IMG/VR virus record: IMGVR_UViG_3300032294_002797
Span: 1-64,000 of that record
DNA length: 64,000 bases
Strand: one strand, 5' to 3'
Part shown: piece after piece, positions 16,967 to 34,131 of the stretch
Layout: every line of letters starts with the position of its first letter
Position numbering within the stretch: the first letter of the stretch is position 1
Notes under the pieces: model-generated
The model's database searches: none
The model's input: only the letters and a program-made list of their open reading frames with translations
What the model was told of the DNA's origin: nothing
Program-made: the position numbers and the translations under genes

Positions 16967-16984
16967 TCAAATGATGTTGAATCA

Positions 16985-18096: not shown

Positions 18097-18178
18097 CGCA
18101 AACCCTTGTCGCACAAGCACTTACGTCAAAATCGGCCCGCCCGATTTGCCCTAAGTCTTTGCTGGGGCAGGATTTAGG
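18097..18178. repeat. 82-bp element copy 2
   Basis: 29+24+29; contains the stop codon of 18151..18657. Confidence 0.9.
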
Positions 18179-18657
18179 AGAGGCACCCGGAAATCCTTCT
18201 CAAACATTTTAACCGTGTCTGAGCGATAAGCACATTCGTCTGGCATATAGCAATAAACACCTACACACTGTGCTTTGGGACAATCTTCATGGATAGTATT
18301 TTTAATATGCCTAATGGTTGAGCCAGAGCAAACTAGATCATCAACAATAATGTATCTGAATGGAGTTACTCCCTCCATAGGAAAATCGCTGTAGCATTTC
18401 TCATCTGGCTTACGAATAAGAACAATATGTTTTTTCAGTAATTCAGCAATTTGTGGAACAACAACAAGTCCACTCACACCACAACAAGCAATACTATCAA
18501 ACTCGTTAGCAATCTTTCTTAGATCACAAACAGCCTTGATAATAACTTTGTTTCTGGCCTGATGATTTAATACCCTGCAAGTGTGGCTAGCACCTTGAAT
18601 AATCTTACCATCTTCGGTGCGTCTAAAGTCTTCAACCATATTATTCATCACATTCAT
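18151..18657 (-). CDS. phosphoribosyltransferase-like protein
   Basis: PRPP-binding motif YIIVDDLVCSGST; IACCGVSG; LIRK. Confidence 0.8.
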   Translation of the reverse strand: MNVMNNMVEDFRRTEDGKIIQGASHTCRVLNHQARNKVIIKAVCDLRKIANEFDSIACCGVSGLVVVPQIAELLKKHIVLIRKPDEKCYSDFPMEGVTPFRYIIVDDLVCSGSTIRHIKNTIHEDCPKAQCVGVYCYMPDECAYRSDTVKMFEKDFRVPLLNPAPAKT

Positions 18658-18748
18658 AAAAACGGACGGTACGATTTGAACGTACTAGAAAGAAAGGAAA
18701 GAAAGAATAGATACTTGTCCCACCAAGTTGCGTCCGTTCAGAAAAGAT

Positions 18749-18943
18749 TCAATCGTCAATTAGTTCGTCTGTGATATTATGATAATAGTTTTCCCAGCCA
18801 GCATTATCCATAGTCTCAGTCTCGTCTTCATCAAGACCAGCCCAAGGCTCATCAGTGCCATCATTATAGTAGCACTCGTCTTCATACAATTCTTCAGAAT
18901 TGTCTAGAATATTATGATAGTCATATTCAAAATCTCTACTCAT
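18749..18943 (-). CDS. acidic hypothetical protein
   Basis: AGGAG RBS; very Asp/Glu-rich. Confidence 0.6.
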   Translation of the reverse strand: MSRDFEYDYHNILDNSEELYEDECYYNDGTDEPWAGLDEDETETMDNAGWENYYHNITDELIDD

Positions 18944-18993
18944 CTCTTTTCTCCTTTGAAAACTATCATACACCAATCAGCCGGTTTGTCAAG

Positions 18994-19066
18994 TGGGGCC
19001 TGTGGGACTCGAACCCACGACCAAAGGTTTAAAAGACCCTTGCTCTACCAACTGAGCTAAAGCCCC
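18994..19066 (-). tRNA. trnK: tRNA-Lys(TTT)
   Basis: Full cloverleaf, anticodon loop CT-TTT-AA, TTCGA T-loop; own promoter. Confidence 0.95.
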
Positions 19067-19106
19067 TACTTTGTATAGTTTATCCTATCGCTTCCATATT
19101 GTCAAG

Positions 19107-19178
19107 TGACCCCAATGAGAATCGAACTCATATTAACAGATTGAAAGTCTGCTTTCCTAACCATTAGAAGATGGGGCC
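19107..19178 (-). tRNA. trnE: tRNA-Glu(TTC)
   Basis: Cloverleaf, loop CT-TTC-AA. Confidence 0.9.
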
Positions 19179-19309
19179 ACTCCCGCAACTCAACGTCAGC
19201 CTCCGTTTTGCTATTGTACATAATCGGTATTCTGTTGTCAAGACTTGAGTTGTTTTTGAATCGAAATGGTGTATAATGACTTAGTGAGTTGTACTACAGG
19301 AGTTCCATT

Positions 19310-19798
19310 ATGAAATGTATTAATTGTAATAAAGATACAGATAACCCTAAATTTTGCTCTAGATCATGCGGAGTGTCTTATAACAACAGAGTAAAACCAA
19401 AAAGAATTAAAAGAATGCAAACATGTATATTTTGTAAAAATCAATTTCATTCTTTACATAGTTATAATCAAAAATATTGTAATAAAAAATGTTTACAAAA
19501 TCATAGAGAGCACAATATCCAAACCAATGGTTTTGGAGAAGGTCATTATCATAATAATTCTATTAGAAAATACCTAATTAAAAAACATGGTAATCATTGT
19601 ATGATCTGTAACCAGTCTGGAGATAATTGGAACGGTAAGCCAATTACTTTAATTGTGGATCATATTGATGGTAAATCTAATAACAATAAACTAGATAACC
19701 TTAGAATTGTTTGTCCTAATTGCGATAGTCAACTACCTACATACAAAGCAAAAAACAAAGGAAATAGCACTCGTAGTTATTTTATAGTCCAAAAGTAA
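19310..19798 (+). CDS. HNH endonuclease inserted in tRNA cluster
   Basis: FCSRSC and YCNKKC Zn motifs; VDHIDGKSNNNKLDNLRIVCPNC; GGTGTA upstream; AGGAG RBS. Confidence 0.9.
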   Translation: MKCINCNKDTDNPKFCSRSCGVSYNNRVKPKRIKRMQTCIFCKNQFHSLHSYNQKYCNKKCLQNHREHNIQTNGFGEGHYHNNSIRKYLIKKHGNHCMICNQSGDNWNGKPITLIVDHIDGKSNNNKLDNLRIVCPNCDSQLPTYKAKNKGNSTRSYFIVQK

Positions 19799-19799
19799 A

Positions 19800-19874
19800 T
19801 AGGGCGTGGAGGAGTCGAACCTTCCCTTTTTTTCACCTTATAAGAGTGACTGCCACTACCGGCGGCAACGCCCC
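19800..19874 (-). tRNA. trnI: atypical tRNA-Ile(TAT)
   Basis: Acceptor GGGGCGT/ACGCCCT, anticodon arm TCACT-CTTATAA-GGTGA, TTCGA; short D-loop and T-stem mismatch. Confidence 0.65.
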
Positions 19875-19924
19875 ATATGAGTATCATACACTATCTATCG
19901 TCAGTTGTCAACCCCAATCTTTAG

Positions 19925-20009
19925 CGGAATCTGAGGGATTCGAACCCCCGGAGGATTTCTCCTCGTCGGTTTAGTAAACCGGTGCATTAGACCACTCTGC
20001 CAAGATTCC
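19925..20009 (-). tRNA. trnS: tRNA-Ser(ACT)
   Basis: Type II cloverleaf with long variable arm, G73, loop TT-ACT-AA. Confidence 0.85.
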
Positions 20010-20012
20010 AAA

Positions 20013-20084
20013 CTGGCGAGACAGGATTCGAACCTGTAACCTAGCGGTTAACAGCCGCTTGCACTACCGTTGTGCTACCCGCCA
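20013..20084 (-). tRNA. trnN: tRNA-Asn(GTT)
   Basis: Cloverleaf, AGCGG-CTGTTAA-CCGCT. Confidence 0.92.
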
Positions 20085-20089
20085 TCAAT

Positions 20090-20161
20090 TTCCGGAGCAT
20101 GGGTACGATCCATGAATAAACGGACCAAAGCCGTTTGTGATACCAGTTTCACCACTCCGGA
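20090..20161 (-). tRNA. trnQ: tRNA-Gln(TTG)
   Basis: Cloverleaf, AACGG-CTTTGGT-CCGTT; atypical T-loop ATCGTAC. Confidence 0.8.
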
Positions 20162-20164
20162 GCA

Positions 20165-20235
20165 AGCCCACAACTAGAATCGAACTAGTATTAGATGATT
20201 ACAAATCAACTGTATTACCATTATACTATGCGGGC
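20165..20235 (-). tRNA. trnT: tRNA-Thr(TGT)
   Basis: Cloverleaf, loop TT-TGT-AA. Confidence 0.85.
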
Positions 20236-20240
20236 GAAGC

Positions 20241-20429
20241 CTACATATCATAGTCCTGACGCCAACCCCTGTCAATATCACGACGGGTACGCTGACGCTT
20301 GGGACGGTTATCAAACAACGTATTACGTTCTTCTCGGTGTCCAGTAGCCAACTCCCACGGTTGCTTGACCTTGACCTTGATCTTATTGTGGTTGCGTTGG
20401 GGTCGAGTATCGTCGTTGAGGTGGTGCAT
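20241..20429 (-). CDS. basic hypothetical protein
   Basis: Arg-rich small ORF; start uncertain. Confidence 0.55.
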   Translation of the reverse strand: MHHLNDDTRPQRNHNKIKVKVKQPWELATGHREERNTLFDNRPKRQRTRRDIDRGWRQDYDM

Positions 20430-20637
20430 AGTCAAACCATTGTCCATTATCGTGTAAATAAAAAACCTTGTCAATATTAGGATCGTACGCCATTAAACAG
20501 TATTGTACCGGATAAACTGGTTTTGTCAACTGTTTTTGTGGAAGTTTAGGAAGTTTAATATCGCCCTTTTGATAGTCTTTTACACCAGTATAGGCTAAAC
20601 CTAATAGTGCAACGATTACCCCAATCCATTGGATCAT
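20383..20637 (-). CDS. membrane-anchored hypothetical protein
   Basis: AGGAGA RBS, N-terminal TM segment; follows promoter 20660-20688. Confidence 0.7.
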   Translation of the reverse strand: MIQWIGVIVALLGLAYTGVKDYQKGDIKLPKLPQKQLTKPVYPVQYCLMAYDPNIDKVFYLHDNGQWFDYAPPQRRYSTPTQPQ

Positions 20638-20659
20638 CAATTCTCCTTTGCGTCTAACT

Positions 20660-20688
20660 AGCATACCATACTTATCGGCAATTGTCAA
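20660..20688 (-). promoter_or_regulatory. sigma70-type early promoter with CCGATA box
   Basis: TTGACA-attgCCGATAagtatgg-TATGCT. Confidence 0.8.
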
Positions 20689-20705
20689 GCGACTCTTTAG
20701 TTTTT

Positions 20706-20787
20706 CCTAAGTACTTGAGACATAAGCACTTACGTCAAATTTTCGCCGCCCCGTTCGTCCTAAGTGGTTACCCACAAAGGACTTAGG
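20706..20787. repeat. 82-bp element copy 3
   Basis: 29+24+29. Confidence 0.9.
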
Positions 20788-20794
20788 AAGAGTT

Positions 20795-21031
20795 TTATTC
20801 TTCTTCCAGGCTCCAACCGGCTTTTCTTACCACCTTAGTAGTTTTATATACTTTAGTATCTGGTAATGCAGTAGCGTAGTCTTTGAATCCTCTTTCATCA
20901 AGATAAAAATGTTCGTCGAGCGTGTCAAATTTATTAGTCTCCCATAATGCTGCTACAGCAGCGTCCAGAGGTTTTTGATTAGTAGAGTAAATAAGTTGTA
21001 GTGTGCCAGATTGTATATAATACTTAGCCAC
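20795..21031 (-). CDS. hypothetical protein
   Basis: GTG start with GGAGG RBS, overlapping the upstream stop. Confidence 0.65.
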   Translation of the reverse strand: MAKYYIQSGTLQLIYSTNQKPLDAAVAALWETNKFDTLDEHFYLDERGFKDYATALPDTKVYKTTKVVRKAGWSLEEE

Positions 21032-21623
21032 TATACCCTCCACCACATTTGTAGCATGAGCAATATTCATATTCGTCCCCGCCCGTTCCTTCGGCCCAAC
21101 AAGGTTCCTCATACTCACCAATATCACCAAGGCTTTCACGACCAACATCTACAATAACCAATACTTTATGCTTACCTCTTTTTACATATCCAAGATTAGC
21201 ATTATGAGCATCTGTATAGGTTATCCCAAACATTTCTTCAATATCAACTATCATTCTGTTGATAACTTCGAAATTTTCGCACAGGTCATTCTCATAACAG
21301 TAGCCATCGCATTGCCTACACTTGAGCGGTGAAGCAATTTCGGTCAAGTATCCCCACTCGCTCAGTACCAATTTTTCCTCGGCTTTATAACCACCCTTGC
21401 CGTCTGATACTGCAAAATAGTTAGGAATCCGTATTCTGCAAACTGGACTATAAACACGCGGAGTAAAAGTACACGGTTCAGATAGTTCGCTCTGTATATG
21501 ATGAGCAAACTCGGCTAAACTTTTATTAGGAAAACTTTTGAATCCGTATCGGCTACCTTTCATTTTATAGAAAGAGTTTTTGCTTCCCCCATCGGCATAT
21601 TTACCAATATATTTAGTAGTCAT
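21024..21623 (-). CDS. protein kinase-like fold protein
   Basis: Gly loop DGGSK, beta3 Lys (GFKSF), catalytic DAHNAN, DFG-like DVG. Confidence 0.65.
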   Translation of the reverse strand: MTTKYIGKYADGGSKNSFYKMKGSRYGFKSFPNKSLAEFAHHIQSELSEPCTFTPRVYSPVCRIRIPNYFAVSDGKGGYKAEEKLVLSEWGYLTEIASPLKCRQCDGYCYENDLCENFEVINRMIVDIEEMFGITYTDAHNANLGYVKRGKHKVLVIVDVGRESLGDIGEYEEPCWAEGTGGDEYEYCSCYKCGGGYSG

Positions 21624-21632
21624 TACATTCTC

Positions 21633-22343
21633 CTAATGAGAGGGAAACAAAACATTAGCCAGACCACGAACACAAAGATCACAGTGTACGCTATTTTTGC
21701 TTTTTGTACAAGTCACAACGCCACGACCACGACGGATTTCCGGGCAAGTGATAAACTTCTCACCCTCTAATACAACGAGTTTAGGCAACGCTTCTCTCCA
21801 TGCGGCGGCTTTAGCCTTGCCGCGAGGACGCTTGGGAGCGATTTTAGTATCACTATCGCACCATGCGAAAAGTTTGAAACCAGCCGCTTTCGCTTGTTTC
21901 ATATCTTCACCGTCGTGGATACTAGCATACATATTTATATACTTGCCAAGTTGAGTAGACAATTTAGTATCATAAATATGGGTATAAGCCCACATAGTCG
22001 GCAGACTACCGCCACTGGCAAGAATACTCTCACAAGCCCACAATACATTATCTACATACTCATGGTCGAGTTCGCCATACTTGAAAAAGTCTCCACGCTC
22101 ATGCCAGCGAACATCTTTATTTTTCTTGACAGCATCCACAAGCATGGCACGGATACGATTTTTTTCCGTGATAAGATTTTGCATACCGGCAGGACGCACA
22201 CCGGGATAGATATTTTCCAAGTCCTCGGCATAGCATCCGTTCCCGAGAAAATCACAATCGCTAGGGCAAGTATCGCCAACGGGGCGACTCACTACGATGC
22301 AATTTTCTTTGCCCAACTTGTCATTACCATTTGCTGTTTTCAT
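21633..22343 (-). CDS. Gp88-like Cys-rich (putative Fe-S) phage protein
   Basis: TCPSDC...GCYA, VRWHERGDF, WAYTH and C-terminal CP...C...CxxC. Confidence 0.7.
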   Translation of the reverse strand: MKTANGNDKLGKENCIVVSRPVGDTCPSDCDFLGNGCYAEDLENIYPGVRPAGMQNLITEKNRIRAMLVDAVKKNKDVRWHERGDFFKYGELDHEYVDNVLWACESILASGGSLPTMWAYTHIYDTKLSTQLGKYINMYASIHDGEDMKQAKAAGFKLFAWCDSDTKIAPKRPRGKAKAAAWREALPKLVVLEGEKFITCPEIRRGRGVVTCTKSKNSVHCDLCVRGLANVLFPSH

Positions 22344-22364
22344 ATTCTTTCTCCTGTGCTACTG

Positions 22365-22393
22365 ATTCTACATTAGAGTATCGGCAGTGTCAA
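22365..22393 (-). promoter_or_regulatory. sigma70-type early promoter with CCGATA box
   Basis: TTGACA-ctgCCGATActctaatg-TAGAAT. Confidence 0.8.
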
Positions 22394-22421
22394 GAGAAAA
22401 ACTTTGGCAAAAATATTTTGA

Positions 22422-22503
22422 TGCAAGTCCTTGCTGCATCAGCAGTTACGTCAAAATCGGCCCCGCGAATTCGCCCTAAGTCTTTATGCTGCAACAACTT
22501 AGC
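22422..22503. repeat. 82-bp element copy 4
   Basis: 29+24+29; abuts the tRNA-Asp 3' end. Confidence 0.9.
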
Positions 22504-22576
22504 GAGAGCGACGGGACTTGAACCCGCAACCTCCAGCGTGACAGGCTGGCGATCTAACCAATTGATCTACGCTCCC
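22503..22576 (-). tRNA. trnD: tRNA-Asp(GTC)
   Basis: Cloverleaf, CCAGC-CTGTCAC-GCTGG. Confidence 0.95.
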
Positions 22577-22579
22577 AAA

Positions 22580-22651
22580 TAGCCCCAAGAGGAATCGAAC
22601 CTCTAACCAGTGCTTAGAAGGCACTTGTTATATCCATTTAACTATAGGGCC
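22580..22651 (-). tRNA. trnR: tRNA-Arg(TCT)
   Basis: Cloverleaf, AGTGC-CTTCTAA-GCACT. Confidence 0.92.
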
Positions 22652-22717
22652 ATAATACCGATAGCCGCCAGTTATTCACCAGCGGCATCTCGGTTTATTA
22701 TAGCATATCGTAGATGC

Positions 22718-22966
22718 TTAGGCAACAGCCTCGGCTTCCACCTTGGCATTGTGAGCGTCACCGGCCTGCTCGGCAGTAACACCCGTGACGCGGGCACGCC
22801 ACACCTTATAACCCTGCTCGCTGAAACTCTTGATTTCGCCAGCCTTGACATTAGCATGAACATCACCAGGCAGCGAACCACTCAGACACTCACGAATCGA
22901 ATCCACAACCGAGTCACGATCAAGTTCATCGGCAACAATATCAACCGCAAACGCAAACTTCTTCAT
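22718..22966 (-). CDS. hypothetical protein
   Basis: GGAGA RBS; GC-rich codon usage; tandem promoters at 23011-23039 and 23099-23127. Confidence 0.75.
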   Translation of the reverse strand: MKKFAFAVDIVADELDRDSVVDSIRECLSGSLPGDVHANVKAGEIKSFSEQGYKVWRARVTGVTAEQAGDAHNAKVEAEAVA

Positions 22967-23098
22967 GTTACATTCTCCAAAAGTGTTACAGTTCCAATCG
23001 TCATAGTATCAGTATACGCTACAGATACTTACTTGTCAAGAGTGCCATGAGGGTTTCTATTGTTGGCTTCGTGGCAGCGTCTTGCGTCGTACTCTATC

Positions 23099-23127
23099 AT
23101 TCTACAGTATAGTATCGGCATTGTCAA
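23099..23127 (-). promoter_or_regulatory. sigma70-type early promoter with CCGATA box
   Basis: TTGACA-atgCCGATActatactg-TAGAAT. Confidence 0.8.
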
Positions 23128-23165
23128 CCCAGCACTTGAGTTAGCCTCAAAAAATTTTTAGTCTT

Positions 23166-23247
23166 CCTAAGTCGTTGAGTATCAAGCACTTACGTCGAAT
23201 TTTCGCGGCCCGCCTCGCCCTAAGTTCTTTAGGGACAAGGCTTTAGG
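23166..23247. repeat. 82-bp element copy 5
   Basis: 29+24+29; abuts the stop at 23248; contains an exact IHF consensus TATCAAGCACTTA. Confidence 0.9.
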
Positions 23248-23619
23248 TTACGAGAGATAACCCTCACAACCCAAACCCGCAAGATCACGCAGCAGATTTT
23301 CCGCCGCTTCGGGAGTCTTGAGCGTGATGCTCTGCTTGGTGTTTGTAGCAGCAGGATACCACCTATCGCCCTTCCAACCACCCACCAGAAAATCCGTCCA
23401 CTCCTTACTTTCCTTCAGACCCCAGCCGGTGTGGAGTCGAATAGCCTTGATGCAAGGAATCCGGTTGTCAAGACTCATACCGCCCGTGATAGTAACGGTC
23501 TTGAGTTGATTCACGCCCAACGCAACCTCAAAAGCATTCACGATCCTGTCGTAAATGTCACGGTTGCAATTGTTGGACAGTTCAAAAGCCTCACGGACGC
23601 TCAGTTGCAGATTAATCAT
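23248..23619 (-). CDS. ribosomal protein bL12 (L7/L12) C-terminal-like domain protein
   Basis: RIPCIKAIRLHTGWGLKESKEW resembles KIxVIKxVRxxTGLGLKEAK. Confidence 0.7.
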   Translation of the reverse strand: MINLQLSVREAFELSNNCNRDIYDRIVNAFEVALGVNQLKTVTITGGMSLDNRIPCIKAIRLHTGWGLKESKEWTDFLVGGWKGDRWYPAATNTKQSITLKTPEAAENLLRDLAGLGCEGYLS

Positions 23620-24098
23620 ATTCCAAAACTTTCTGTATATTTAGGTTCAATCTCGTAAATGCCGTCAAAATTTCCGTTTCGTTCTTCTAGGACATATACC
23701 TGTTTACCATCAGTAATCAAGGTATCGTATTCACTATTGTCCCAAATGAACTCATTGTTATCACTTTCTCGTCGCCAGTGTGGATCACGAAGCGGATTAT
23801 AATACAACTTTTCCAGATTGTCAACAGGTAAAGAGGGATAAAAATCCTTACGCAACATAAACTCATTACATCTAACCCATCCACTCACATCATGCACACC
23901 AGCCTCAAATACCTGTTTAGCCTTATTCGGCCTATTCCACAACTTACAACCCCGCATCTCCAATTGATATTCAGACGGATCAAAATAGCAAACCTCCACG
24001 GTTTTGCCACCTTGCTTAATTTTCAGTTGCCAAAACATATAGTTAGGCCCGTTACTCAAATGAAAGCGAACTTCGCCGTATGGTGGTCTAGGTTTCAT
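23616..24098 (-). CDS. hypothetical phage protein
   Basis: 160-aa ORF; ATG only about 6 nt below a TAGAAT -10, so probably leaderless. Confidence 0.75.
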   Translation of the reverse strand: MKPRPPYGEVRFHLSNGPNYMFWQLKIKQGGKTVEVCYFDPSEYQLEMRGCKLWNRPNKAKQVFEAGVHDVSGWVRCNEFMLRKDFYPSLPVDNLEKLYYNPLRDPHWRRESDNNEFIWDNSEYDTLITDGKQVYVLEERNGNFDGIYEIEPKYTESFGI

Positions 24099-24145
24099 AT
24101 CGACATTCTACCTTAAAAACTTTAATTGTCAAGTACACCTTAGTC

Positions 24146-24192
24146 TGGCTGACTATCAGCAACGGCAGCAAATCCGTAGGATTAGGCAAGAC
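24146..24192. repeat. dispersed repeat family B copy 4
   Basis: GCTGACTA-N14-AAATCCGTAGGATTA-N5-GAC. Confidence 0.85.
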
Positions 24193-24279
24193 AAGCAGAT
24201 TGGGTTATGCCATACTCGGCCTTACATTTAACCGTGGCTTCTTTGATATCATTCTGCCAGCGGCCCTCATCTACTTATC
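24190..24279 (-). ncRNA. candidate small RNA (~90 nt)
   Basis: Own promoter 24287-24315; 11-bp closing helix with two G-U pairs on minus strand; no ORF. Confidence 0.5.
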
Positions 24280-24333
24280 GTGTTCTAGTATACCTCTATT
24301 ATCGGATATTGTCAAGGTTAGTCTTTAAAAAAT

Positions 24334-24415
24334 CCTAAGTGCTTGTCCCATAAGAAGTTACGACAAATTTTAGCCGCCGAATTTGCCCTAAGTCCTTATC
24401 CTACAATGAGTTACC
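24334..24415. repeat. 82-bp element copy 6
   Basis: 29+24+29. Confidence 0.9.
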
Positions 24416-24515
24416 GATATACCACCAATGGCATTGTTGGCAAAATATCCAGATTATACCATTTTTGTCATATTTCCAACACAATTCGTCACAAGCCCCA
24501 CACGGGCAAATATCA

Positions 24516-24689
24516 CTAAGAGTTTTCATATACAAACTTTATATATCTATCTACAAGTTCTGATACAGCAATCTCATGAGTACTGATTAGTTCTTTTACT
24601 TGGCTTACATTATGCTTATTTACAGCAGCCATCTTATTTCTGAAAAAACTCAGAATAAGAATCATAGCCTTATCACGATCATTAACCAT
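24516..24689 (-). CDS. hypothetical protein
   Basis: Start moved to MVNDRDK, overlapping the upstream stop. Confidence 0.55.
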   Translation of the reverse strand: MVNDRDKAMILILSFFRNKMAAVNKHNVSQVKELISTHEIAVSELVDRYIKFVYENS

Positions 24690-26040: not shown

Positions 26041-26076
26041 TTGGTATTACTATACAGCATATAACCTTGCTGTCAA

Positions 26077-26260: not shown

Positions 26261-26326
26261 TACTCAGTCATTCTACAATATATTATCGACTTGTCAAGAG
26301 GGTTTCTTGAAAAAATATTTTTTTGA

Positions 26327-26408
26327 TGTAAGGTGTTGGAGGATAAAGACTTACGACAAATCCGGCGGCGCAAATTCGCCCTAAGTCCCCTTGGGCAAAG
26401 AACTTAGA
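26327..26408. repeat. 82-bp element copy 7
   Basis: 29+24+29. Confidence 0.9.
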
Positions 26409-26419
26409 GCGAACCGCGT

Positions 26420-26902: not shown

Positions 26903-26912
26903 CTTTTTTCCT

Positions 26913-27071
26913 TTATTCTATTTCCAAAATCTCATAGACCCCAATCTTAGGATCCATACAATGTTCATCATATTCTTTTTCTTGACGAACCCACTCCCTA
27001 GCATCCTCTATATCGTCAAAATCATAGTTTCTACTTGACCCATTTTCAGTTCTAATCACACGATAGACCAT
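26913..27071 (-). CDS. hypothetical protein
   Basis: Start moved to MVYRVI (GAGG RBS, promoter 27094-27122). Confidence 0.6.
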   Translation of the reverse strand: MVYRVIRTENGSSRNYDFDDIEDAREWVRQEKEYDEHCMDPKIGVYEILEIE

Positions 27072-27135
27072 ACAGACCTCTCTTTCTGCACCAATCATAT
27101 CATAATACAGACTATTTGTCAAGAGCCCATTATTT

Positions 27136-27182
27136 TGGCTGACTATCGCCCATAACCGCAAATCCGTAGGATTAGGAGGGAC
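27136..27182. repeat. dispersed repeat family B copy 5
   Basis: Consensus match; contains the stop of 27172..27333. Confidence 0.85.
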
Positions 27183-27333
27183 AGGATATACGTTCAACTA
27201 AAATATAGTCGCCATATTTTTCTTTGGCTTTTCGTAGAGCATCATATTCGCTCATAGCAACAACGTATCCAACAAAACGATTGTGTTGGAAAACTCGCCA
27301 TGAAATACCGGAATAGCAAAATGTAGTGTTCAT
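27172..27333 (-). CDS. hypothetical protein
   Basis: Probably leaderless, under promoter 27340-27367; ends CPS-stop inside repeat B. Confidence 0.6.
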   Translation of the reverse strand: MNTTFCYSGISWRVFQHNRFVGYVVAMSEYDALRKAKEKYGDYILVERISCPS

Positions 27334-27386
27334 AGAGTTATTGTACCGTATTATCGGCAAGAGTCAAGAGCAAACTTTAGATTATT

Positions 27387-27468
27387 CGTAAAGTCTTGTG
27401 GTATAAGGAGTTAGATCAAATTTTGCGGCGCGCCCTCGCCCTAAGTGCTGCCGTAGCAACAACTTAGG
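27387..27468. repeat. 82-bp element copy 8
   Basis: 29+24+29. Confidence 0.9.
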
Positions 27469-27496
27469 GGAAGGGTTCAACTTTTTAGATTATGAA

Positions 27497-27904
27497 TCAA
27501 GCAAACATAAGTGCCAGATTCGTGGAAAACAGTGCCTTACCACCAATTGGCTTACGCACGTTCGTGGTACGTTCTGCATAGAAGTTACGCACAGTACCAT
27601 TCGGCATTTCGCAAGTCACAAGATGGCGAGTACGCTGAAACTGCGGATCGTTTGCACGATACCGGCTACGGACATTCAAACGGCGGATACTATTATCATC
27701 CAACGTGTGAACTTCCAGAACCTTAGCAAGATAACGCTCAGGATCGCCGTGATGGGGCTGCTCATAAATGAAGTTATAAACTTCGCCGGGAGCAGCATTC
27801 CCCAGACTACCATGAACACCACCATAGATGCTATACAGCGTAAAAGCAATCAGAAGACCAGCAACAACAGCAAACAAACCACCAACCAGAATAAAATCGT
27901 TCAT
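27497..27904 (-). CDS. membrane-anchored protein, possible WYL/SH3-like domain
   Basis: N-terminal TM; C-terminal VRNFYAER resembles WYL RxFxxxR (weak). Confidence 0.6.
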   Translation of the reverse strand: MNDFILVGGLFAVVAGLLIAFTLYSIYGGVHGSLGNAAPGEVYNFIYEQPHHGDPERYLAKVLEVHTLDDNSIRRLNVRSRYRANDPQFQRTRHLVTCEMPNGTVRNFYAERTTNVRKPIGGKALFSTNLALMFA

Positions 27905-28003
27905 ATGAACCCTTTTTGTTGTGAAAACTTTCCCTTATGTCTCACGATTCTACACTACTTATCGGCAAGAGTCAAGTGCTAAGTTTAGAAAAAATATTTT
28001 CGC

Positions 28004-28085
28004 CATAAGTCGTTGCAGCATAAGGAGTTGCGTCAAATTTTGCGGCACCCGCTCGTCCTAAGTGCTTACACACCAAGGGCTTACG
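28004..28085. repeat. 82-bp element copy 9
   Basis: 29+24+29; contains the stop at 28081. Confidence 0.9.
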
Positions 28086-28287
28086 TCAGTACGACAGGCT
28101 CGCTCCTGAACGAACATACAGGCTGGCCGCTTGCCGCAACCAAAACGTCAAGCATTGCACCAACCTGTTCCATACGTTCAACAGGCTGATCCATATCGTA
28201 CTCGGGAATCTCAAGAACAAATTCACGATCCAAACCCACATCACCATTATCGGTTTCGATCACAATATCAAAAAAACGGTGTTGCAT
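28081..28287 (-). CDS. hypothetical protein
   Basis: Single-gene cassette with promoter 28311-28339 and GAGG RBS. Confidence 0.7.
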   Translation of the reverse strand: MQHRFFDIVIETDNGDVGLDREFVLEIPEYDMDQPVERMEQVGAMLDVLVAASGQPVCSFRSEPVVLT

Positions 28288-28366
28288 CTAATCCTCTCTT
28301 TCGTATGCTAATCCTACACTATACTTATCGGCTTGTCAAGCGGGTCTCTTGAAAAATTTTATTTGA

Positions 28367-28448
28367 CGTAAAGCGTTGAGACATAAGGAGTTACGTTAAA
28401 TTTTGCGGCGCCCCCTCGCTCTAAGTTCTTTGGCGGTAAGGGTTTGCG
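28367..28448. repeat. 82-bp element copy 10
   Basis: 29+24+29; contains the stop at 28421. Confidence 0.9.
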
Positions 28449-28972
28449 ACAGGAGGATAAAACTTCATAAAATTCTCAATATGATCGTCATATGCCATAT
28501 TCATATTGTCACAAGTTTCATCAAAACCAATAGAATATCCTTCCTTACCTCTCTTACGGCTATATTCCTGAACATACCTAGTAACATACTTGCTTTCTGT
28601 CCATTTGAAAATCGTACCTTTTGGAGTAATAAAAACCATGAACAAAATATCAAAAAGTTCAGGTTTGATTTTTTGCAAAGTATAATACTTATATTTGTTT
28701 TGATGCAAAGTCAATTTAGCGGTTTTTACTTCGCACCTAATACTATCATTCAAAAGAATATCAAAAATTTTACCGTGACCGTGCCGTTTCACATCATACT
28801 TAGCCCTACTCAAACGATCACACATCAGGCACTCACCAGCATCCCCCATTCCGGTAGAATCCAGATTGGAGATTTTCCAGCATAGATAATTTTTCTTACG
28901 CGAATAAAAATTGTCTGGACGGGAAATTTTGAGATTATGCTTGATCCTGTTGAAATCTCTCATCGTAAACAT
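28421..28972 (-). CDS. PD-(D/E)xK restriction-endonuclease-like protein
   Basis: GDAGE...FDILLN...CEVKTA catalytic pattern; AGGAGG RBS. Confidence 0.7.
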   Translation of the reverse strand: MFTMRDFNRIKHNLKISRPDNFYSRKKNYLCWKISNLDSTGMGDAGECLMCDRLSRAKYDVKRHGHGKIFDILLNDSIRCEVKTAKLTLHQNKYKYYTLQKIKPELFDILFMVFITPKGTIFKWTESKYVTRYVQEYSRKRGKEGYSIGFDETCDNMNMAYDDHIENFMKFYPPVANPYRQRT

Positions 28973-29058
28973 TGCTTTTCCTCCTTATTGGAATACGCTT
29001 AGTCTACAATGCTTATCGGCTAATGTCAATAGATTTAGCCATAAAATTATTTTTTGAT

Positions 29059-29140
29059 CATAAGTCTATATCCCATAACAACTTACGTCAAATTTTCGCC
29101 GCCCCGCTCGCCCTAAGTGCTTACGCACCAAGGGTTTGCG
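29059..29140. repeat. 82-bp element copy 11
   Basis: 29+24+29. Confidence 0.9.
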
Positions 29141-29147
29141 GCGAGTT

Positions 29148-29381
29148 TTATTCAAAGTCTACGAAAATAACTTGATTATATCCACGAGGCTTAATAGTAA
29201 GGCTCTCGCTGTAATCGTAGGTATCGGCCTTTACACCCGTCATACCCGCGAGCAACTTGGCCTTTCGCACAATATTACGCTGAGACGCCCCGCTATTAAT
29301 AGCAAACTCATAACGGTTAGCCCAAGAGTAGTTTGCCTCACCATTAAATGTGTCGGTCTGCGTAACGGTAACCTTCATCAT
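29148..29381 (-). CDS. hypothetical phage protein
   Basis: TDTFNGEANYSW; start moved to MMKVTV. Confidence 0.7.
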   Translation of the reverse strand: MMKVTVTQTDTFNGEANYSWANRYEFAINSGASQRNIVRKAKLLAGMTGVKADTYDYSESLTIKPRGYNQVIFVDFE

Positions 29382-29495
29382 CTTATTATTCCTTTTAGAG
29401 AGAAAAGTGTCGATCCAATTTTTAACGTTTTTAGTAAGCATTTTAACAATTCTGTGTATAATATAGTATACATCAACTATCAGGAGATGAATACT

Positions 29496-29897
29496 ATGTC
29501 AAAATATGATCCTCAAGAATACCAAAGAAACAAACAGGCCTATTTAGAAAGACAGAAACGATACAAGAACAAACACAAGGATACCATCAATGAGCGTCAA
29601 CGTCAATACCGTGAGTCAAATAAATCCCAACTCAATGTTTATGCCAATAGGCGTAAAAATAAAATTAGAGAAAAATATGATGAATATATGCAAGATAAAA
29701 AATGTAGCCATTGTGGATACTCTGATCCTAGATCGTTAGTTTGGCATCATACTGATTCGTCTAACAAAAAGAATGGCGTTGTTCAATTAGTTGGCAAGAA
29801 ACATGGATGGGATACTATTTTAGCAGAAATTAATAAGTGTATATGTTTATGCCATAATTGCCACAATATATTGCATAATCACCAATCATCTCCGTAG
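29496..29897 (+). CDS. HNH endonuclease
   Basis: CSHCG...LVWHH...EINKCICLCHNCH; AGGAG RBS; TGTGTA late-type motif upstream; start moved from 29136. Confidence 0.85.
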   Translation: MSKYDPQEYQRNKQAYLERQKRYKNKHKDTINERQRQYRESNKSQLNVYANRRKNKIREKYDEYMQDKKCSHCGYSDPRSLVWHHTDSSNKKNGVVQLVGKKHGWDTILAEINKCICLCHNCHNILHNHQSSP

Positions 29898-30154
29898 TCG
29901 GAATCGTGGTTATAGTATTCGTCCACACCCCATCCACATGAGCCGAACGCAGATTCAGCATCACCATCCATACTATCATCGTACGAATCATCCCAACCGT
30001 TCTCCAAATCTTCGGCGGTAACATCACCGTAAAAATCTTTATGGTCATCATACAGGTACTCGGCCAAAAGGGCGTCACTAGGATCATGCTCAACAACCAT
30101 ATCATCATCCTCATAAGCGTTATCGGGATCGAACAGTGGATCAGGGTGGCTCAT
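29879..30154 (-). CDS. highly acidic protein
   Basis: Strongly Asp/Glu-rich; AGGAGA RBS. Confidence 0.7.
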   Translation of the reverse strand: MSHPDPLFDPDNAYEDDDMVVEHDPSDALLAEYLYDDHKDFYGDVTAEDLENGWDDSYDDSMDGDAESAFGSCGWGVDEYYNHDSDYGDDW

Positions 30155-30177
30155 TTGTTTTCTCCTTTTCACCAATC

Positions 30178-30360
30178 CTACCAAATAAAATCGTTCGCGT
30201 CAAGAGGCTCGGGATACATTTCTTCCCACAAGCCAGTAACTTCTGCGTAATCAAACGGACTGCAATCGCTAGAGTCAATCGGCTCGGCCAGGGGCTCCAA
30301 GATACCATCTTCGGTCATCTCGTTCAGAATCCGGTTGATTTCATCAAAATCGTTCAGCAT
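30178..30360 (-). CDS. acidic hypothetical protein
   Basis: GGGAGA RBS; promoter 30387-30414. Confidence 0.7.
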   Translation of the reverse strand: MLNDFDEINRILNEMTEDGILEPLAEPIDSSDCSPFDYAEVTGLWEEMYPEPLDANDFIW

Positions 30361-30451
30361 AATTGATTCTCCCTTGTGATACGCTGATTCTATACTAATT
30401 ATCGGTCATGTCAAGCCCGCTCTATAGAAAATCTCTAAAAAAATTTCTTGA

Positions 30452-30533
30452 TGTAAGTCTATGGCAGATAAGGAGTTACGTCGCGGCGGGCGGCGCCGCC
30501 TTGTCCTAAGTACTTTAGGCTCAAGGCTTTACG
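30452..30533. repeat. 82-bp element copy 12
   Basis: 29+24+29; abuts the stop at 30534. Confidence 0.9.
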
Positions 30534-30845
30534 TCAATTTCCCACAACCATACCGTCTATAAACGGATAGGATTTATCGTTGATTTTCACAAACCATTCG
30601 AAATTCTTTTGATAAACATAACGTGGGCTATACTGGTTAATTCGATCTTTAGTAGTCAGAGTTTGCCAGCCACCACTATTCAGTGTATAGGTATCATCCT
30701 CATGAATCTTCACCACATAGGTGCTGTGTAGTCTAATTCCTACGCTACCATCATGCAGAATTTCAGCGTAAGTATTATTACCAACCTTGCGAGTATCCCG
30801 ATTAGTCTTACCACGAACCATACTAACTGCTTCGGAATGATTCAT
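30534..30845 (-). CDS. hypothetical phage protein
   Basis: LNSGGWQTLTTKDRIN motif typical of small phage early proteins. Confidence 0.75.
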   Translation of the reverse strand: MNHSEAVSMVRGKTNRDTRKVGNNTYAEILHDGSVGIRLHSTYVVKIHEDDTYTLNSGGWQTLTTKDRINQYSPRYVYQKNFEWFVKINDKSYPFIDGMVVGN

Positions 30846-30994
30846 TACTTGTTTTCCTTTTTCTTGGACTCGACCATCTCACGATACAGATTTTCCAGAA
30901 ACCTAACTTGTGCAACTGCACGGCCAGTTTCTTGCTTCATGCGAGTTTCTGTTTTCTGGTACTCGCTAACCGGCTTTCTCTTGGTTTTCATCAT
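30845..30994 (-). CDS. basic hypothetical protein
   Basis: AGGAGA RBS; promoter 31011-31039. Confidence 0.6.
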   Translation of the reverse strand: MMKTKRKPVSEYQKTETRMKQETGRAVAQVRFLENLYREMVESKKKENK

Positions 30995-31069
30995 CTTTCT
31001 CCTGCGATTGATTCTACAGTATAGATCGGCAAGAGTCAAGCATAATCTTTAGCAGATTTTTATTTTGTT

Positions 31070-31151
31070 CTTAAGTCGTTGGAATATAAGGAGTTACGTC
31101 GAATTTTGCGGCGCAAATTTTCCCTAAGTGCTTATGCAGTAAGGGTTTGCG
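31070..31151. repeat. 82-bp element copy 13
   Basis: 29+24+29; contains the stop of 31132..31293. Confidence 0.9.
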
Positions 31152-31293
31152 TCTCTTTTATCCATCGCCTTTTCAACTGTTTTGCAAGATGTTGTATTCG
31201 GTTCATAATAGCGGCCCGCTGTAACGGATGTTGTACAGTGGACAAACGTATCTGTTCGATTCGCAGAATATCTTGAAGCACTCGCGTTTTCAT
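31132..31293 (-). CDS. hypothetical protein (53 aa, below ORF-track cutoff)
   Basis: MKTRVLQDILRIEQIRL... starts 3 nt after the upstream stop. Confidence 0.55.
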   Translation of the reverse strand: MKTRVLQDILRIEQIRLSTVQHPLQRAAIMNRIQHLAKQLKRRWIKETQTLTA

Positions 31294-31295
31294 TT

Positions 31296-31664
31296 TTATT
31301 CCTTCCAAGCAAACGGAGAAATTTCCTCACCACAAGCCAGAATCGCAGCGTACTGGTGAGCAAGAGCCTCAACCCTTTCACGAGAACCCGGCTTGCCAGC
31401 CTTCACGATCATACTATCCTCACCACCCACAAATCGCGGGTCGTTGGTTTCCTTTTTAATCTTGCCCAGATTCTTGAGAGCCTTACGATTAAACTTGAGC
31501 ACCTTTTCGCTCACAACATACCTACCATGATCCTGCACACCGGACACATAGTCCACACCTTCCACAACCCGAGAGTCAGGAACCGGAACCAGAGTAGGAA
31601 TCGCAATTCCCTTGAAAACCATTCGTGCTTGACGCTTCGCATTTTCGATAATTTCAAACTTCAT
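31296..31664 (-). CDS. hypothetical protein, paralog of 34771..35085
   Basis: Shared NAKRQARMVFxGIAIPT...GKPGSxERVxALAxQYAAI...CGEExSPF. Confidence 0.85.
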   Translation of the reverse strand: MKFEIIENAKRQARMVFKGIAIPTLVPVPDSRVVEGVDYVSGVQDHGRYVVSEKVLKFNRKALKNLGKIKKETNDPRFVGGEDSMIVKAGKPGSRERVEALAHQYAAILACGEEISPFAWKE

Positions 31665-31703
31665 TTTCTTTCTCCTTTGGATTGGTTGGATTCTAGCAAA
31701 ATT

Positions 31704-31940
31704 TCAAGAGGCTGTCAACTCCATTTCCTCGATCATTTCCGCAAACGGAATCATCTTGGAAACGAGCGTCTGCTCAGTATTGTCATCATGGAAGAACGTT
31801 TGTACACTGTCGTTTTCCAGAAACACCGTAACTTGGAATCCGCAGATACTAGCGAAACCGCCGGTCGTGCGACGAATCCACATATCCTTCTCACCAAGAA
31901 ACCTAGCAGCAACCTTTTCAACCATCTCTTGCGTAATCAT
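31704..31940 (-). CDS. hypothetical protein
   Basis: Polypurine leader; promoter near 31966-31994. Confidence 0.7.
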   Translation of the reverse strand: MITQEMVEKVAARFLGEKDMWIRRTTGGFASICGFQVTVFLENDSVQTFFHDDNTEQTLVSKMIPFAEMIEEMELTAS

Positions 31941-32013
31941 CTCTTTCTCTCTTTCTTATACGGGAATTATACCTTAGTTATCGGCAAAAGTCAAGCAGAA
32001 TATTTAGAGAATT

Positions 32014-32042
32014 TTTAAATCCTTATTTCTCAACACTTTACG
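32014..32042. repeat. family A single 29-bp site
   Basis: TTTAAATCCTT-N7-AACACTTTACG. Confidence 0.65.
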
Positions 32043-32086
32043 TCAAGACCGGCCTGAATGGACACTTAGAATCTTGAGAAACTGAT

Positions 32087-32168
32087 CGTAAACCCTTGGC
32101 AGATAAGGAGTTACGTCAAATTTTGCGGCGCCGCCTCGCCGTAAGTGCTTATACAGCAAGGCTTTGCG
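32087..32168. repeat. 82-bp element copy 14
   Basis: 29+24+29. Confidence 0.9.
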
Positions 32169-32543
32169 TCAACTATTTACAACCCAGGCCGCTATACATC
32201 CGATCACGAATGAACAAAACAGCATAATCTGATCATTCTTTATCATTTTTTCTATGATCCTTTGAAGGGTAAACCAAATCAGAAACAAGCCAACTGCACC
32301 CAATACCCACCACAAATCCCACAAACATCCAAATCCATTCTACATTTAGATCGGCCATCCCTAGCACCCCTCTTTAGTTTTTATTCTACAGGAATTTTAC
32401 TGATCATGTACCCTAAGAAAAACCCTAGAGTCACAATAAAATTTAGACCCATCAAATATACAAGAATATTCATAAACCTTCACCTCTCTTTTCCACATTC
32501 TATACTATTATCGGCCTGCGTCAAGCCCAAGGTACAGTCTTTT

Positions 32544-32590
32544 TGGCTGACTAAACCCACTCAGCCCAAATCCGCAGGATTACCTGGGAC
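32544..32590. repeat. dispersed repeat family B copy 6
   Basis: Consensus match; contains the stop of 32580..32750. Confidence 0.85.
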
Positions 32591-32750
32591 ACTTATCCAT
32601 CACAGTATCCAGATATATCCCATCTTTACTCACAACCCATCCATATTCTACATCTTGCCCATAGACCCCAATATAACACCGACCTTTATCACACCCTTCG
32701 ATCTTGCACTCATAACCCACCAGACCCATCAACATAACCCAAATTGCCAT
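32580..32750 (-). CDS. hypothetical protein (56 aa)
   Basis: MAIWVMLMGLVGYECK...DKCPR-stop; AAGGA upstream. Confidence 0.5.
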   Translation of the reverse strand: MAIWVMLMGLVGYECKIEGCDKGRCYIGVYGQDVEYGWVVSKDGIYLDTVMDKCPR

Positions 32751-32788
32751 AGTTATCCAGAATCCTTTCTTTGACCAGACTATGTTTT

Positions 32789-32835
32789 TCGCTGACTATA
32801 CCCAACCTACCCAAATCCGTAGGATTACGTGGGAC
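32789..32835. repeat. dispersed repeat family B copy 7
   Basis: Consensus match; contains the stop of 32825..33031. Confidence 0.85.
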
Positions 32836-33031
32836 AAGAGAACAGTTCTACATCCGAAATAACTCGCACACACTTTTTGTTTTCGTCTACTTCATAGACT
32901 GAGCAATCGTACTGATATAAAAAACGATTACCGATATCTCTTTGCCAGACTACCCTTGCTTCATCCAGACTATCATACAGACGGTAATCTTGAATGAAAC
33001 CATCAAACACTATTGCAAACTTATTTTTCAT
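32825..33031 (-). CDS. hypothetical protein
   Basis: Ends CPT-stop inside repeat B. Confidence 0.65.
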   Translation of the reverse strand: MKNKFAIVFDGFIQDYRLYDSLDEARVVWQRDIGNRFLYQYDCSVYEVDENKKCVRVISDVELFSCPT

Positions 33032-34112: not shown

Positions 34113-34131
34113 TCGAACTTTTTAGGCTTTA

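What the first reader, a model, noticed from the sequence alone, without database searches (positions are those of the whole stretch)
18097..33031. The repeats supply the stop codons and C-termini of adjacent genes
Seen: stops lie inside family A for genes ending at 18151, 28081, 28421 and 31132. They abut it exactly at 15690, 23248 and 30534, and the tRNA-Asp discriminator base is the outermost base of copy 4. Three unrelated genes (27172, 32580, 32825) all end C-P-x-stop because family B encodes those codons. Inference: genes were joined to the elements by recombination at the element edge, reminiscent of integron cassettes whose stops fall in attC. Extreme compaction is the alternative.
Basis: partly seen in the sequence, partly recalled or inferred. 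Interest (0 to 1): 0.62.

Follow-up and report, generated by a model that had tools for sequence, protein, structure and literature searches.

The report
Phage inter-gene repeats that hold stop codons
In a 223-kb freshwater jumbo phage, small early genes are separated by repeated "dyad element + promoter" modules. The genes are packed so tightly against these modules that the repeats supply many stop codons and short protein tails, and the same repeats act as crossover points for gain and loss of gene cassettes.

Summary
Family A is an 85-nt double-dyad element with 17 copies, all within 16.9-35.6 kb of the 223-kb phage genome. Each copy sits just upstream of an A/T tract and a consensus sigma-70 promoter. 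Its conserved half-sites, C(G/C)TAAGTnCTT and TGACG, carry TGA, TAA and TAG in all three frames. Family B (8 copies) fixes a TAA that gives C-P-x-stop.

The same elements fill the early regions of related freshwater phage contigs: 243 copies in 52 loci. There, about two thirds of upstream gene families stop in or at the element, in roughly equal frames.

Integron-like capture at the element edge is not supported. No integrase, serine recombinase or Y1 transposase gene is present. Homologs without the element keep equivalent C-termini (PRTase-like P-x-L-N; Kyano_Gp96-like DGMVV). Cassette gain and loss crosses over inside the element, at different points. A relative and an independent metagenome variant both lack the 28421 cassette and carry one chimeric element.

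The best reading is tight packing against a PeSL-like promoter/dyad module that recombines by homology. What the dyads do biochemically is still unknown.

The parts
16885..16969 (-). Family A copy A1. The upstream gene's stop is 80 nt away, with a separate hairpin between them.
   Evidence: nhmmer E about 1e-16; alignment
18097..18181 (-). A2. Arm 1 encodes LLNPAPAKT plus TAG (18153-18151) of the PRTase-like gene 18151-18657.
   Evidence: 120 homologs keep the LLNP.P.(K/R)T tail.
20706..20790 (-). A3. The stop of the upstream gene (20795) lies 4 nt before it.
22422..22506 (-). A4. It follows tRNA-Asp directly; the discriminator G22503 is the outer base of the first half-site.
23166..23250 (-). 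A5. The TAA (23250-23248) of gene 23248-23619 sits directly before CCTAAAG.
   Evidence: 12 of 12 homologs (28-80% identity) keep this junction, with TAA, TGA or TAG.
24334..24418 (-). A6.
   Evidence: 6 of 6 homologs read into arm 1, with tails that follow the arm sequence.
26327..26411 (-). A7. The upstream stop (26420) lies 8 nt before it.
27387..27471 (-). A8. The upstream stop (27497) lies 25 nt before it.
28004..28088 (-). A9. The TAA (28083-28081) of gene 28081-28287 is the TAA of the first half-site, CGTAAG.
28367..28451 (-). A10. Arm 1 encodes PVANPYRQRT plus TAG (28423-28421) of gene 28421-28972. This is the downstream boundary of the polymorphic cassette.
29059..29143 (-). A11. This is the upstream boundary of the polymorphic 28421 cassette. 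The stop of gene 29148-29381 lies 4 nt before it.
30452..30536 (-). A12. Its first three bases, TGA (30536-30534), are the stop of the Kyano_Gp96-like gene 30534-30845.
31070..31154 (-). A13. Arm 1 encodes ETQTLTA plus TAA (31134-31132) of the 53-aa gene 31132-31293.
32087..32171 (-). A14. It is followed by an extra lone arm at 32017-32054.
34031..34115 (-). A15. The upstream stop lies 16 nt before it.
34661..34745 (-). A16. The upstream stop lies 25 nt before it.
35533..35617 (-). A17. This is the first copy, at the head of the minus-strand early array.
15657..15692 (-). A lone, degenerate A-type arm. Its TGA (15692-15690) ends gene 15690-15887.
   Evidence: read from the sequence; not detected by the full-length profile
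27133..27183 (-). Family B copy. Its fixed TAA (27174-27172) ends the gene in C-P-S-stop.
   Evidence: 9 of 9 homologs of this gene stop at the same TAA.
32541..32591 (-). Family B copy. Its TAA ends gene 32580-32750 in C-P-R-stop.
   Evidence: A 245-nt joint between this copy and the next B copy is seen in run X5.
32786..32837 (-). Family B copy. Its TAA ends gene 32825-33031 in C-P-T-stop.
24144..24194 (-). Family B copy with no long ORF ending in it. Further B copies lie at 12595-12646, 13995-14046, 16503-16552 and 16707-16757.
28311..28339 (-). An example of the promoter half of the module: TTGACA, 17 nt containing CCGATA, then TAGGAT. About 37 strong sigma-70-like sites on the minus strand lie between 16 and 36 kb.
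28378..29073 (-). A 696-nt cassette (part of A11's arm 2, a promoter, gene 28421-28972, most of A10). It is absent from a natural variant and from relative L007.
   Evidence: joint 28377 to 29074, side 255, depth 114; chimeric single element

Best explanation
Families A and B are the upstream halves of composite inter-cassette modules. These modules punctuate a 19-kb hyperplastic early-gene array in a lineage of uncultured freshwater jumbo phages.

An A module has three parts:
- two imperfect 29-nt dyads, 53 nt apart, built from four half-sites C(G/C)TAAGTnCTT around a G+C-rich centre;
- an A/T tract;
- a near-consensus sigma-70 promoter with a conserved CCGATA spacer.

Shown: the conserved half-sites contain TGA (TGACG), TAA (CGTAAG or CCTAAG) and TAG (ACTTAGG), so together they close all three reading frames. 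Genes are packed directly against or into arm 1. An ORF that has no stop of its own ends at the first element-encoded stop in its frame. The outcome is no extra residue, one or two, or a 4-10-residue tail, depending on the frame.

Shown: the gene plus its arm 1 is inherited as a unit. Each gene family keeps its own junction across relatives.

Shown: two cassette gain/loss events cross over inside the repeated module, at different positions. That points to homologous recombination between dispersed copies, as in the PeSL elements of T4-type phages. It does not point to a site-specific join at the element edge.

Inferred: the overlaps arise from selection for compact packing, together with tolerance of short junk tails.

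Inferred: the dyads have a regulatory role at transcript ends or just upstream of promoters, acting as an insulator, a 3'-end element or a protein-binding site. Which of these is not settled.
For: - Anatomy and copy number: 17 copies, all within 16,885-35,617 of the 223,302-bp genome, each followed by a promoter. The consensus from 151 distinct copies shows the four half-sites.
- Spread in the lineage: 243 copies in 52 IMG/VR loci, spaced 0.6-1.5 kb apart. The window's sequence occurs in lake and freshwater metagenomes from 14 studies.
- Stop positions by upstream gene family (40 usable families): 13 stop upstream of the element, 12 at position 0/1, 6 at position 6, and 9 at positions 14-34. 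The frames split 7:11:9.
- Junctions are conserved within families: 12/12, 6/6 and 9/9 homologs, and 120 PRTase-like homologs.
- C-termini are native. Distant PRTase-like homologs share P-x-(L/F)-N plus a tail of similar or greater length. In three of them the next gene follows within 0-12 nt, and two of those loci (L060, L061) hold no A or B element at all. The Kyano_Gp96 profile is matched to position 109 of 110, and homologs without the element end at the same place.
- Chimeric junctions: L007 has one element, with arm 1 like A11 and arm 2 like A10. An X5 contig skips 696 nt in register inside arm 2.
- Pairs of copies with a homologous upstream gene but a different downstream gene share arm 1 (identity 0.75/0.82 against a baseline of 0.64/0.75) but not arm 2.
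- No integrase, serine recombinase or Y1 transposase is encoded.
- The element alone is almost never missing between the same two flanking genes: 1 of 243 comparisons.
Against: - What the dyads do is not shown.
- They are not canonical intrinsic terminators: 19 terminator-like sites against 13.6 +/- 3.9 in shuffles.
- Their arms show no compensatory changes: 72.6% of positions are paired against 72.9% in shuffles.
- Different copies fold differently, with z-scores from +1.1 to -4.5.
- Only two cassette junctions are well supported. The other joints have short sides and could come from relatives.
- The link between arm 2 and the downstream gene is weak.
- The loci are partly redundant, and the orientation of 47 of 237 copies was ambiguous.
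- How a new gene first acquires its flanking modules is unknown, so a one-off join at the edge when a cassette is born cannot be excluded.
Confidence: 0.7

Rival explanations
1. Integron-like capture. Genes were joined to the elements by site-specific recombination at the element edge. The element would play the role of attC, and that is why stops and C-termini lie inside it.
For: - The array is cassette-like and the element has dyad symmetry.
- 12 of 40 upstream gene families stop exactly at model position 0/1.
- Cassette presence/absence is bounded by elements.
Against: - No PF00589, PF00239 or PF01797 match in a CheckV-complete genome.
- The two mapped crossovers lie inside the element and at different places.
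- Every cassette has its own promoter.
- The position-1 peak is simply the frame that meets the element's own TGA. The frames split 7:11:9.
- C-termini are native in the PRTase-like and Kyano_Gp96-like genes.
Confidence: 0.07
2. Family A is a MITE- or REP-like mobile element that inserts on its own into the 3' ends of genes and replaces their ends.
For: - It is an 85-nt unit with terminal inverted symmetry (TTGACGTAAG ... CTTACGTCAA), in many copies, always between genes.
Against: - In 243 comparisons where both flanking genes have homologs in another locus, the element is missing alone in only 1.
- No target-site duplication was seen in the flanks that were read.
- No transposase of the three families tested is encoded.
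- Junctions are stable within gene families down to 28-40% protein identity.
- The element is not a repeat of bacterial genomes. A scan of 185,579 species found 9 loci, of which at least four are short or multi-copy MAG contigs.
Confidence: 0.06
3. The dyads are operators for a phage or host DNA-binding protein, like the stoperators of mycobacteriophages. The protein would block read-through or shut off the early promoters, and stops fall inside the sites only because the sites sit at gene ends. This is a rival about the function of the dyads. It is compatible with the compaction and homologous-recombination account.
For: - The conservation is of sequence, not of pairing.
- The four half-sites have invariant TAA..TT and A.TTA bases.
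- The two dyads are 53 nt apart, about five helical turns.
- There is no common RNA fold.
Against: - No binding protein has been identified. The small genes around the array have no Pfam match.
- The distance from arm 2 to the -35 hexamer varies from 19 to 39 nt.
- Nothing here tests binding.
Confidence: 0.3

Closest known systems
PeSL (promoter-early stem-loop) elements of T4-type phages (Arbiol et al. 2010, PMC2839356; Comeau et al. 2014, PMC4122927)
   Same: - A composite of a dyad or stem-loop, an A/T-rich tract and a sigma-70-like early promoter.
- Repeated between small ORFan genes in a hyperplastic early region.
- A close relative carries a single chimeric element where the other genome has element-cassette-element.
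- Crossover points vary within the module, as expected for homologous recombination.
   Different: - The host phage is not T4-like; terminase, portal and capsid give only weak, non-T4 matches.
- The 'stem-loop' is an 85-nt double dyad of four conserved half-sites. It is not a simple G+C hairpin and does not look like a canonical terminator.
- Genes routinely end inside it.
- Mini-circles and terminator activity were not tested.
Integron gene cassettes with attC
   Same: - An array of small cassettes, each ending in an imperfectly palindromic repeat that often contains the stop codon.
- Cassette presence/absence polymorphism.
   Different: - No IntI-type recombinase.
- Cassettes carry their own promoters.
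- The crossover position is not fixed.
- Conservation is of sequence in four half-sites, not of a folded bottom strand.
Stoperators of cluster A mycobacteriophages (my own knowledge, not checked in a paper here)
   Same: Many copies of a short conserved site in tight intergenic spaces at gene ends, some overlapping stop codons.
   Different: Stoperators are 13-bp asymmetric repressor sites spread over a temperate genome. Here the sites are paired 29-nt dyads in one early array, and no repressor is known.
REP/BIME and REPIN elements of bacteria (my own knowledge)
   Same: Mosaics of inverted short repeats just after gene ends.
   Different: No RAYT (Y1 transposase) is present. The element is restricted to phages and is tied to a promoter.
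Morons of lambdoid phages (my own knowledge)
   Same: Accessory genes flanked by their own promoter and a downstream element. The array has higher G+C than the rest of the genome (41.9% against 34.3%).
   Different: Here the flanking signals are one repeated, homologous module shared by all the cassettes.

Membership tests
PeSL-type composite modules | A sigma-70-like early promoter as part of the repeated unit | tested here: met
   TTGACA, 16-17 nt, TAnAAT follows 15 of 17 A copies and most B copies.
PeSL-type composite modules | A stem-loop just upstream of the promoter that terminates transcription | tested here: inconclusive
   Dyad symmetry is present. However, there is no canonical terminator signal, no compensatory changes and the folds are heterogeneous. 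Terminator activity cannot be tested with these tools.
PeSL-type composite modules | Clustered in hyperplastic regions between small, variable genes | tested here: met
   All 17 copies lie within 18.7 kb of a 223-kb genome. Gene content differs between relatives.
PeSL-type composite modules | Indels or replacements between close relatives bounded by the elements, leaving a chimeric element | tested here: met
   L007's single chimeric element. The X5 contig skips 696 nt in register.
PeSL-type composite modules | Circular cassette intermediates (mini-circles) | not testable with these tools
   This needs inverse PCR or long reads from infected cells or virions.
Integron / attC cassettes | An IntI tyrosine recombinase next to the array | tested here: not met
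   No PF00589 match in the complete 223-kb record; the control genomes all give matches.
Integron / attC cassettes | Crossover at one fixed position of the repeat | tested here: not met
   The two junctions cross over at different places: the centre and arm 2.
Integron / attC cassettes | Promoterless cassettes expressed from a common Pc promoter | tested here: not met
   Each cassette has its own consensus promoter.
MITE / REP-like mobile repeats | Presence/absence of the element alone at otherwise identical sites, with target duplications | tested here: not met
   1 of 243 flank-matched comparisons lacks only the element. No duplications were seen in the flanks that were read.
MITE / REP-like mobile repeats | A cognate transposase (such as RAYT, a Y1 transposase) | tested here: not met
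   No PF01797 or PF00239 match.
Operator or stoperator-like protein-binding sites | Specific binding by a regulator | not testable with these tools
   The only support is indirect: sequence-level conservation of four half-sites and the 53-nt phasing.

The most novel reading that the evidence does not exclude
The 85-nt double dyad may be a dedicated site recognised by an as yet unidentified phage protein. That protein would both insulate transcription units and promote cassette exchange. The array would then be a phage-borne gene-cassette system, analogous in function to an integron but without any known recombinase family, and widespread in freshwater jumbo phages.
Probability: 0.12. Interest if true: 0.8.

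Novelty: new variant of a known kind. Interest (0 to 1): 0.45.

Why it matters
- It extends the PeSL idea, in which repeated promoter modules are the points where accessory genes are shuffled, beyond T4-type phages. The new setting is an abundant, uncultured freshwater jumbo-phage lineage, and the repeat is far more elaborate.
- One such event can be seen directly as a polymorphism in natural populations.
- It is a practical warning for annotation. Short C-terminal tails shared by unrelated phage proteins (NP...KT, CPx) can be encoded by repeats and need not have a function.
- The conserved half-sites give a simple DNA signature for finding these arrays and their cassette content in metagenomes.

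Tried and rejected
- My first IMG/VR pattern had one N too many and found only a chance hit. The corrected pattern worked.
- megablast of the region against named phages found nothing.
- RNAalifold gave no consensus structure for family A or B. Hand-specified arm hairpins showed no covariation.
- Rfam has no family for either repeat.
- The metatranscriptome runs X17 and X20 are held only as contigs. Some contigs run through A8 and across promoters, but they cannot show transcript ends or exclude DNA, so nothing is claimed from them.
- Several further joints between A copies (for example 31135 to 32184 and 29153 to 30496) have sides of only 21-36 nt at 85% likeness. I did not count them.
- A first tblastx scan for element-only indels was dominated by paralogs and partial hits. 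Only the stricter version is used.
- Pfam gave nothing for most small cassette genes, so no candidate binding protein emerged.
- The genome-collection scan did not reveal a host.
Only genetic code 11 was used.

Full report
**What the window is.** The window is the first 64 kb of a single 223,302-bp IMG/VR virus record that CheckV rates as 100% complete. It is a very divergent tailed jumbo phage.
- It encodes a large terminase, a portal and a capsid-like protein with only weak PHROG matches, plus a 4,690-aa ORF.
- The best terminase match to named phages is 26% identity. megablast finds nothing.
- Near-identical DNA occurs in lake and freshwater metagenomes from 14 studies.
- Genes from about 2 kb to 35.6 kb run on the minus strand. 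The finding lies in this early-looking block.

**Anatomy of family A.**
- A profile built from the repeat finds 17 full copies, all between 16,885 and 35,617, and each matches on both strands.
- Read in the direction of the genes, a copy has three parts. Arm 1 and arm 2 are imperfect 29-nt dyads whose starts are 53 nt apart. Between them lies a G+C-rich centre that ends in AAAATTT.
- The consensus of 151 distinct copies shows four half-sites, C(G/C)TAAGTnCTT, in alternating orientation.
- After arm 2 come an A/T tract, often a CTAAAG box, and a near-consensus promoter: TTGACA, a spacer containing CCGATA, then TAGAAT or similar.
- The repeated unit is therefore a module of about 170 nt: the dyad element plus a promoter.

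**The dyads are not canonical terminators.**
- Terminator-like sites are not enriched: 19 against 13.6 +/- 3.9 in shuffles.
- The arms show no compensatory changes: 72.6% of cells are paired against 72.9% in shuffles.
- RNAalifold finds no consensus structure, and single copies fold in different ways.
- Rfam has no matching family.

**Family B.** It has 8 copies between 12,595 and 32,837, all on the minus strand. Each has a small hairpin (AATCC/GGATT) with a compensatory variant (AACCC/GGGTT) in relatives, then an invariant TAGTCAGC box, and usually a promoter.

- There is one more inside-stop, at 24401.
- The half-sites carry TGA (in TGACG), TAA (in CGTAAG or CCTAAG) and TAG (in ACTTAGG), one in each frame.
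- Two unrelated genes, 18151 and 28421, read arm 1 in the same frame. That is why both end N-P-x-x-x-(K/R)-T-stop.
- In family B the codons TGT CCC nnn TAA give C-P-x-stop.
- Two of the three B-terminated products show a weak similarity, so they may not be fully unrelated.

**The pattern is a property of a whole phage lineage.**
- A degenerate core pattern found 52 loci from about 35 IMG/VR contigs, several of them 180-230 kb long.
- The profile finds 243 copies in those loci, spaced 0.6-1.5 kb apart.
- I oriented the copies by their downstream promoter and grouped the upstream ORFs into families. Forty families were usable. Thirteen stop before the element, 12 at position 0/1, 6 at position 6, and 9 at positions 14-34.
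- The three frames are used about equally (7:11:9). This is what is expected if ORFs run into the element in any phase and stop at the first triplet it offers.

**The junction is inherited with the gene.**
- The 23248 family has 12 of 12 homologs (28-80% identity) with the stop directly before CCTAAAG, although the stop itself varies between TAA, TGA and TAG.
- The 24401 family has 6 of 6 homologs reading into arm 1, with tails that change with the arm sequence.
- The 31132 family has 4 of 6 homologs with the same element-encoded tail.
- The B-terminated 27172 family has 9 of 9 homologs ending at the same TAA.
- In other families the junction moves by small indels, with stop positions from -33 to +6.

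- *PRTase-like gene 18151.* It has 648 word-search homologs. The best 120 nearly all end LLNP.P.(K/R)T, so the overlap is old.
  - A search of 1.84 billion cluster representatives reached 30-45% identical relatives. These share a native C-terminal P-x-(L/F)-N followed by a tail of similar or greater length.
  - In three of them the next gene follows within 0-12 nt. Two of those loci hold no A or B element at all.
  - The LLN of the window protein is therefore native. The first half-site of arm 1 (CTCCTAAAYCC) lies on native codons, and nothing was cut off at the element edge.
- *Gene 30534.* It matches Pfam Kyano_Gp96 to profile position 109 of 110. Its homologs end DGMVV plus 0-2 residues whether an element, a gap or another gene follows.
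- *Gene 28421.* The conserved core ends at KFYP. After it come 2-11 variable residues, element-shaped in some homologs and not in others.

**The elements are still recombination points.**
- The closest relative in hand is L007, at 84% DNA identity in shared blocks. It has one element where the window has A11, the 28421 cassette and A10. That single element has arm 1 like A11 and arm 2 like A10.
- Independently, a 652-nt contig from a DNA run of another study (X5) joins 28377 to 29074. It skips 696 nt in register inside arm 2, with 255 nt on the shorter side of the joint.
- The two crossovers are at different places in the module.
- A 245-nt joint between two B copies, and variants that lack the opposite-strand HNH-like gene, also appear.
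- Across copies, pairs with a homologous upstream gene but a different downstream gene share arm 1 above baseline but not arm 2.
- The element alone is almost never missing between the same two flanking genes: 1 of 243 comparisons.
- The genome encodes no tyrosine integrase, serine recombinase or Y1 transposase.
- This is the PeSL pattern described for T4-type phages: a composite promoter/stem-loop repeat in hyperplastic regions, a chimeric element left by cassette loss, and variable crossover zones (PMC2839356, PMC4122927).

**Verdict.**
- The stops and tails inside the repeats are a by-product of two things. The repeat's conserved bases close all three frames, and the genes are packed hard against it.
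- The array does behave as a set of cassettes, but exchange is by homology within the module, not by a join at its edge.
- What is new is the setting, a non-T4, freshwater jumbo-phage lineage, and the form of the repeat, a double dyad of four half-sites with no sign of being a simple terminator.
- What the dyads do remains open. A protein-binding or insulator role is my leading guess.

**Limits.**
- The loci are pieces and are partly redundant.
- Orientation was ambiguous for 47 of 237 copies.
- Only two junctions are solid.
- The RNA data were contigs and are uninformative.

Noticed in passing
window 12590-12649, 13990-14049, 24139-24197; L002:8417-8478; L004:2966-3027: Inside family B, two direct 5-6-mers lie 9 nt apart, between the hairpin and the TAGTCAGC box. 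They co-vary from copy to copy (TGCTG..TGCTG, TGGAAA..TGGAAA, TGGTT..TGGTT, TGGCTG..TGGCTG). I counted 91 identical positions against 69.7 expected, and 0 of 5000 permutations reach that. I have no explanation for co-varying direct repeats.
   Followed up: partly
window 29499-29897 (+) and 19289-19798 (+): Two A+T-rich genes lie on the opposite strand inside the minus-strand array. Both have Cys/His HNH-like motifs; the second has a weak Pfam HNH_3 match (E 3.8e-4). The first is absent from relative L007 and from metagenome variants (joints 29398 to 29912 and 29393 to 29946). They look like mobile homing-endonuclease genes.
   Followed up: partly
window 16885-35617: The cassette array has 41.9% G+C (41.4% without the A elements) against 34.3% for the rest of the genome. 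Some genes, such as the DUF932 gene at 17050-17997, are well above 50% by eye. This suggests that many cassettes came from elsewhere.
   Followed up: no
window 18993-20235 and 22502-22652: There are nine tRNA genes, including the unusual anticodons Ile-TAT and Ser-ACT. Several have their own TTGACA-type promoter directly upstream. All read A/T-rich codons, as expected if the host has a higher G+C content than the phage.
   Followed up: no
window 31296-31664 and 34771-35085: Two paralogous genes lie within the array, both ending in ...SPF.... This is the most widespread cassette family in the relatives (31 tblastn hits each). It has no Pfam match.
   Followed up: no
window 16800-16827, 32017-32054, 33840-33869, 15657-15692: Lone single arms of family A (half elements), some followed by an A/T tract. 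One forms a third arm just after A14. They may be remnants of recombination or decay, like the 'half PeSLs' described for T4-type phages.
   Followed up: no
window 34805-40000 = L012:7745-12940: This stretch is 100% identical to another IMG/VR contig of 119,799 bp from a different sample id. The same phage was therefore assembled twice.
   Followed up: no
window 47946-62018 (+): A single 4,690-aa ORF follows the head genes. I did not examine it.
   Followed up: no
L054:3520-3640: Downstream of a 49%-identical homolog of gene 28421, the A element is shortened and decayed to about 60 nt. It still keeps the outer half-site remnants and the CTAAAG/TTGACA promoter.
   Followed up: partly
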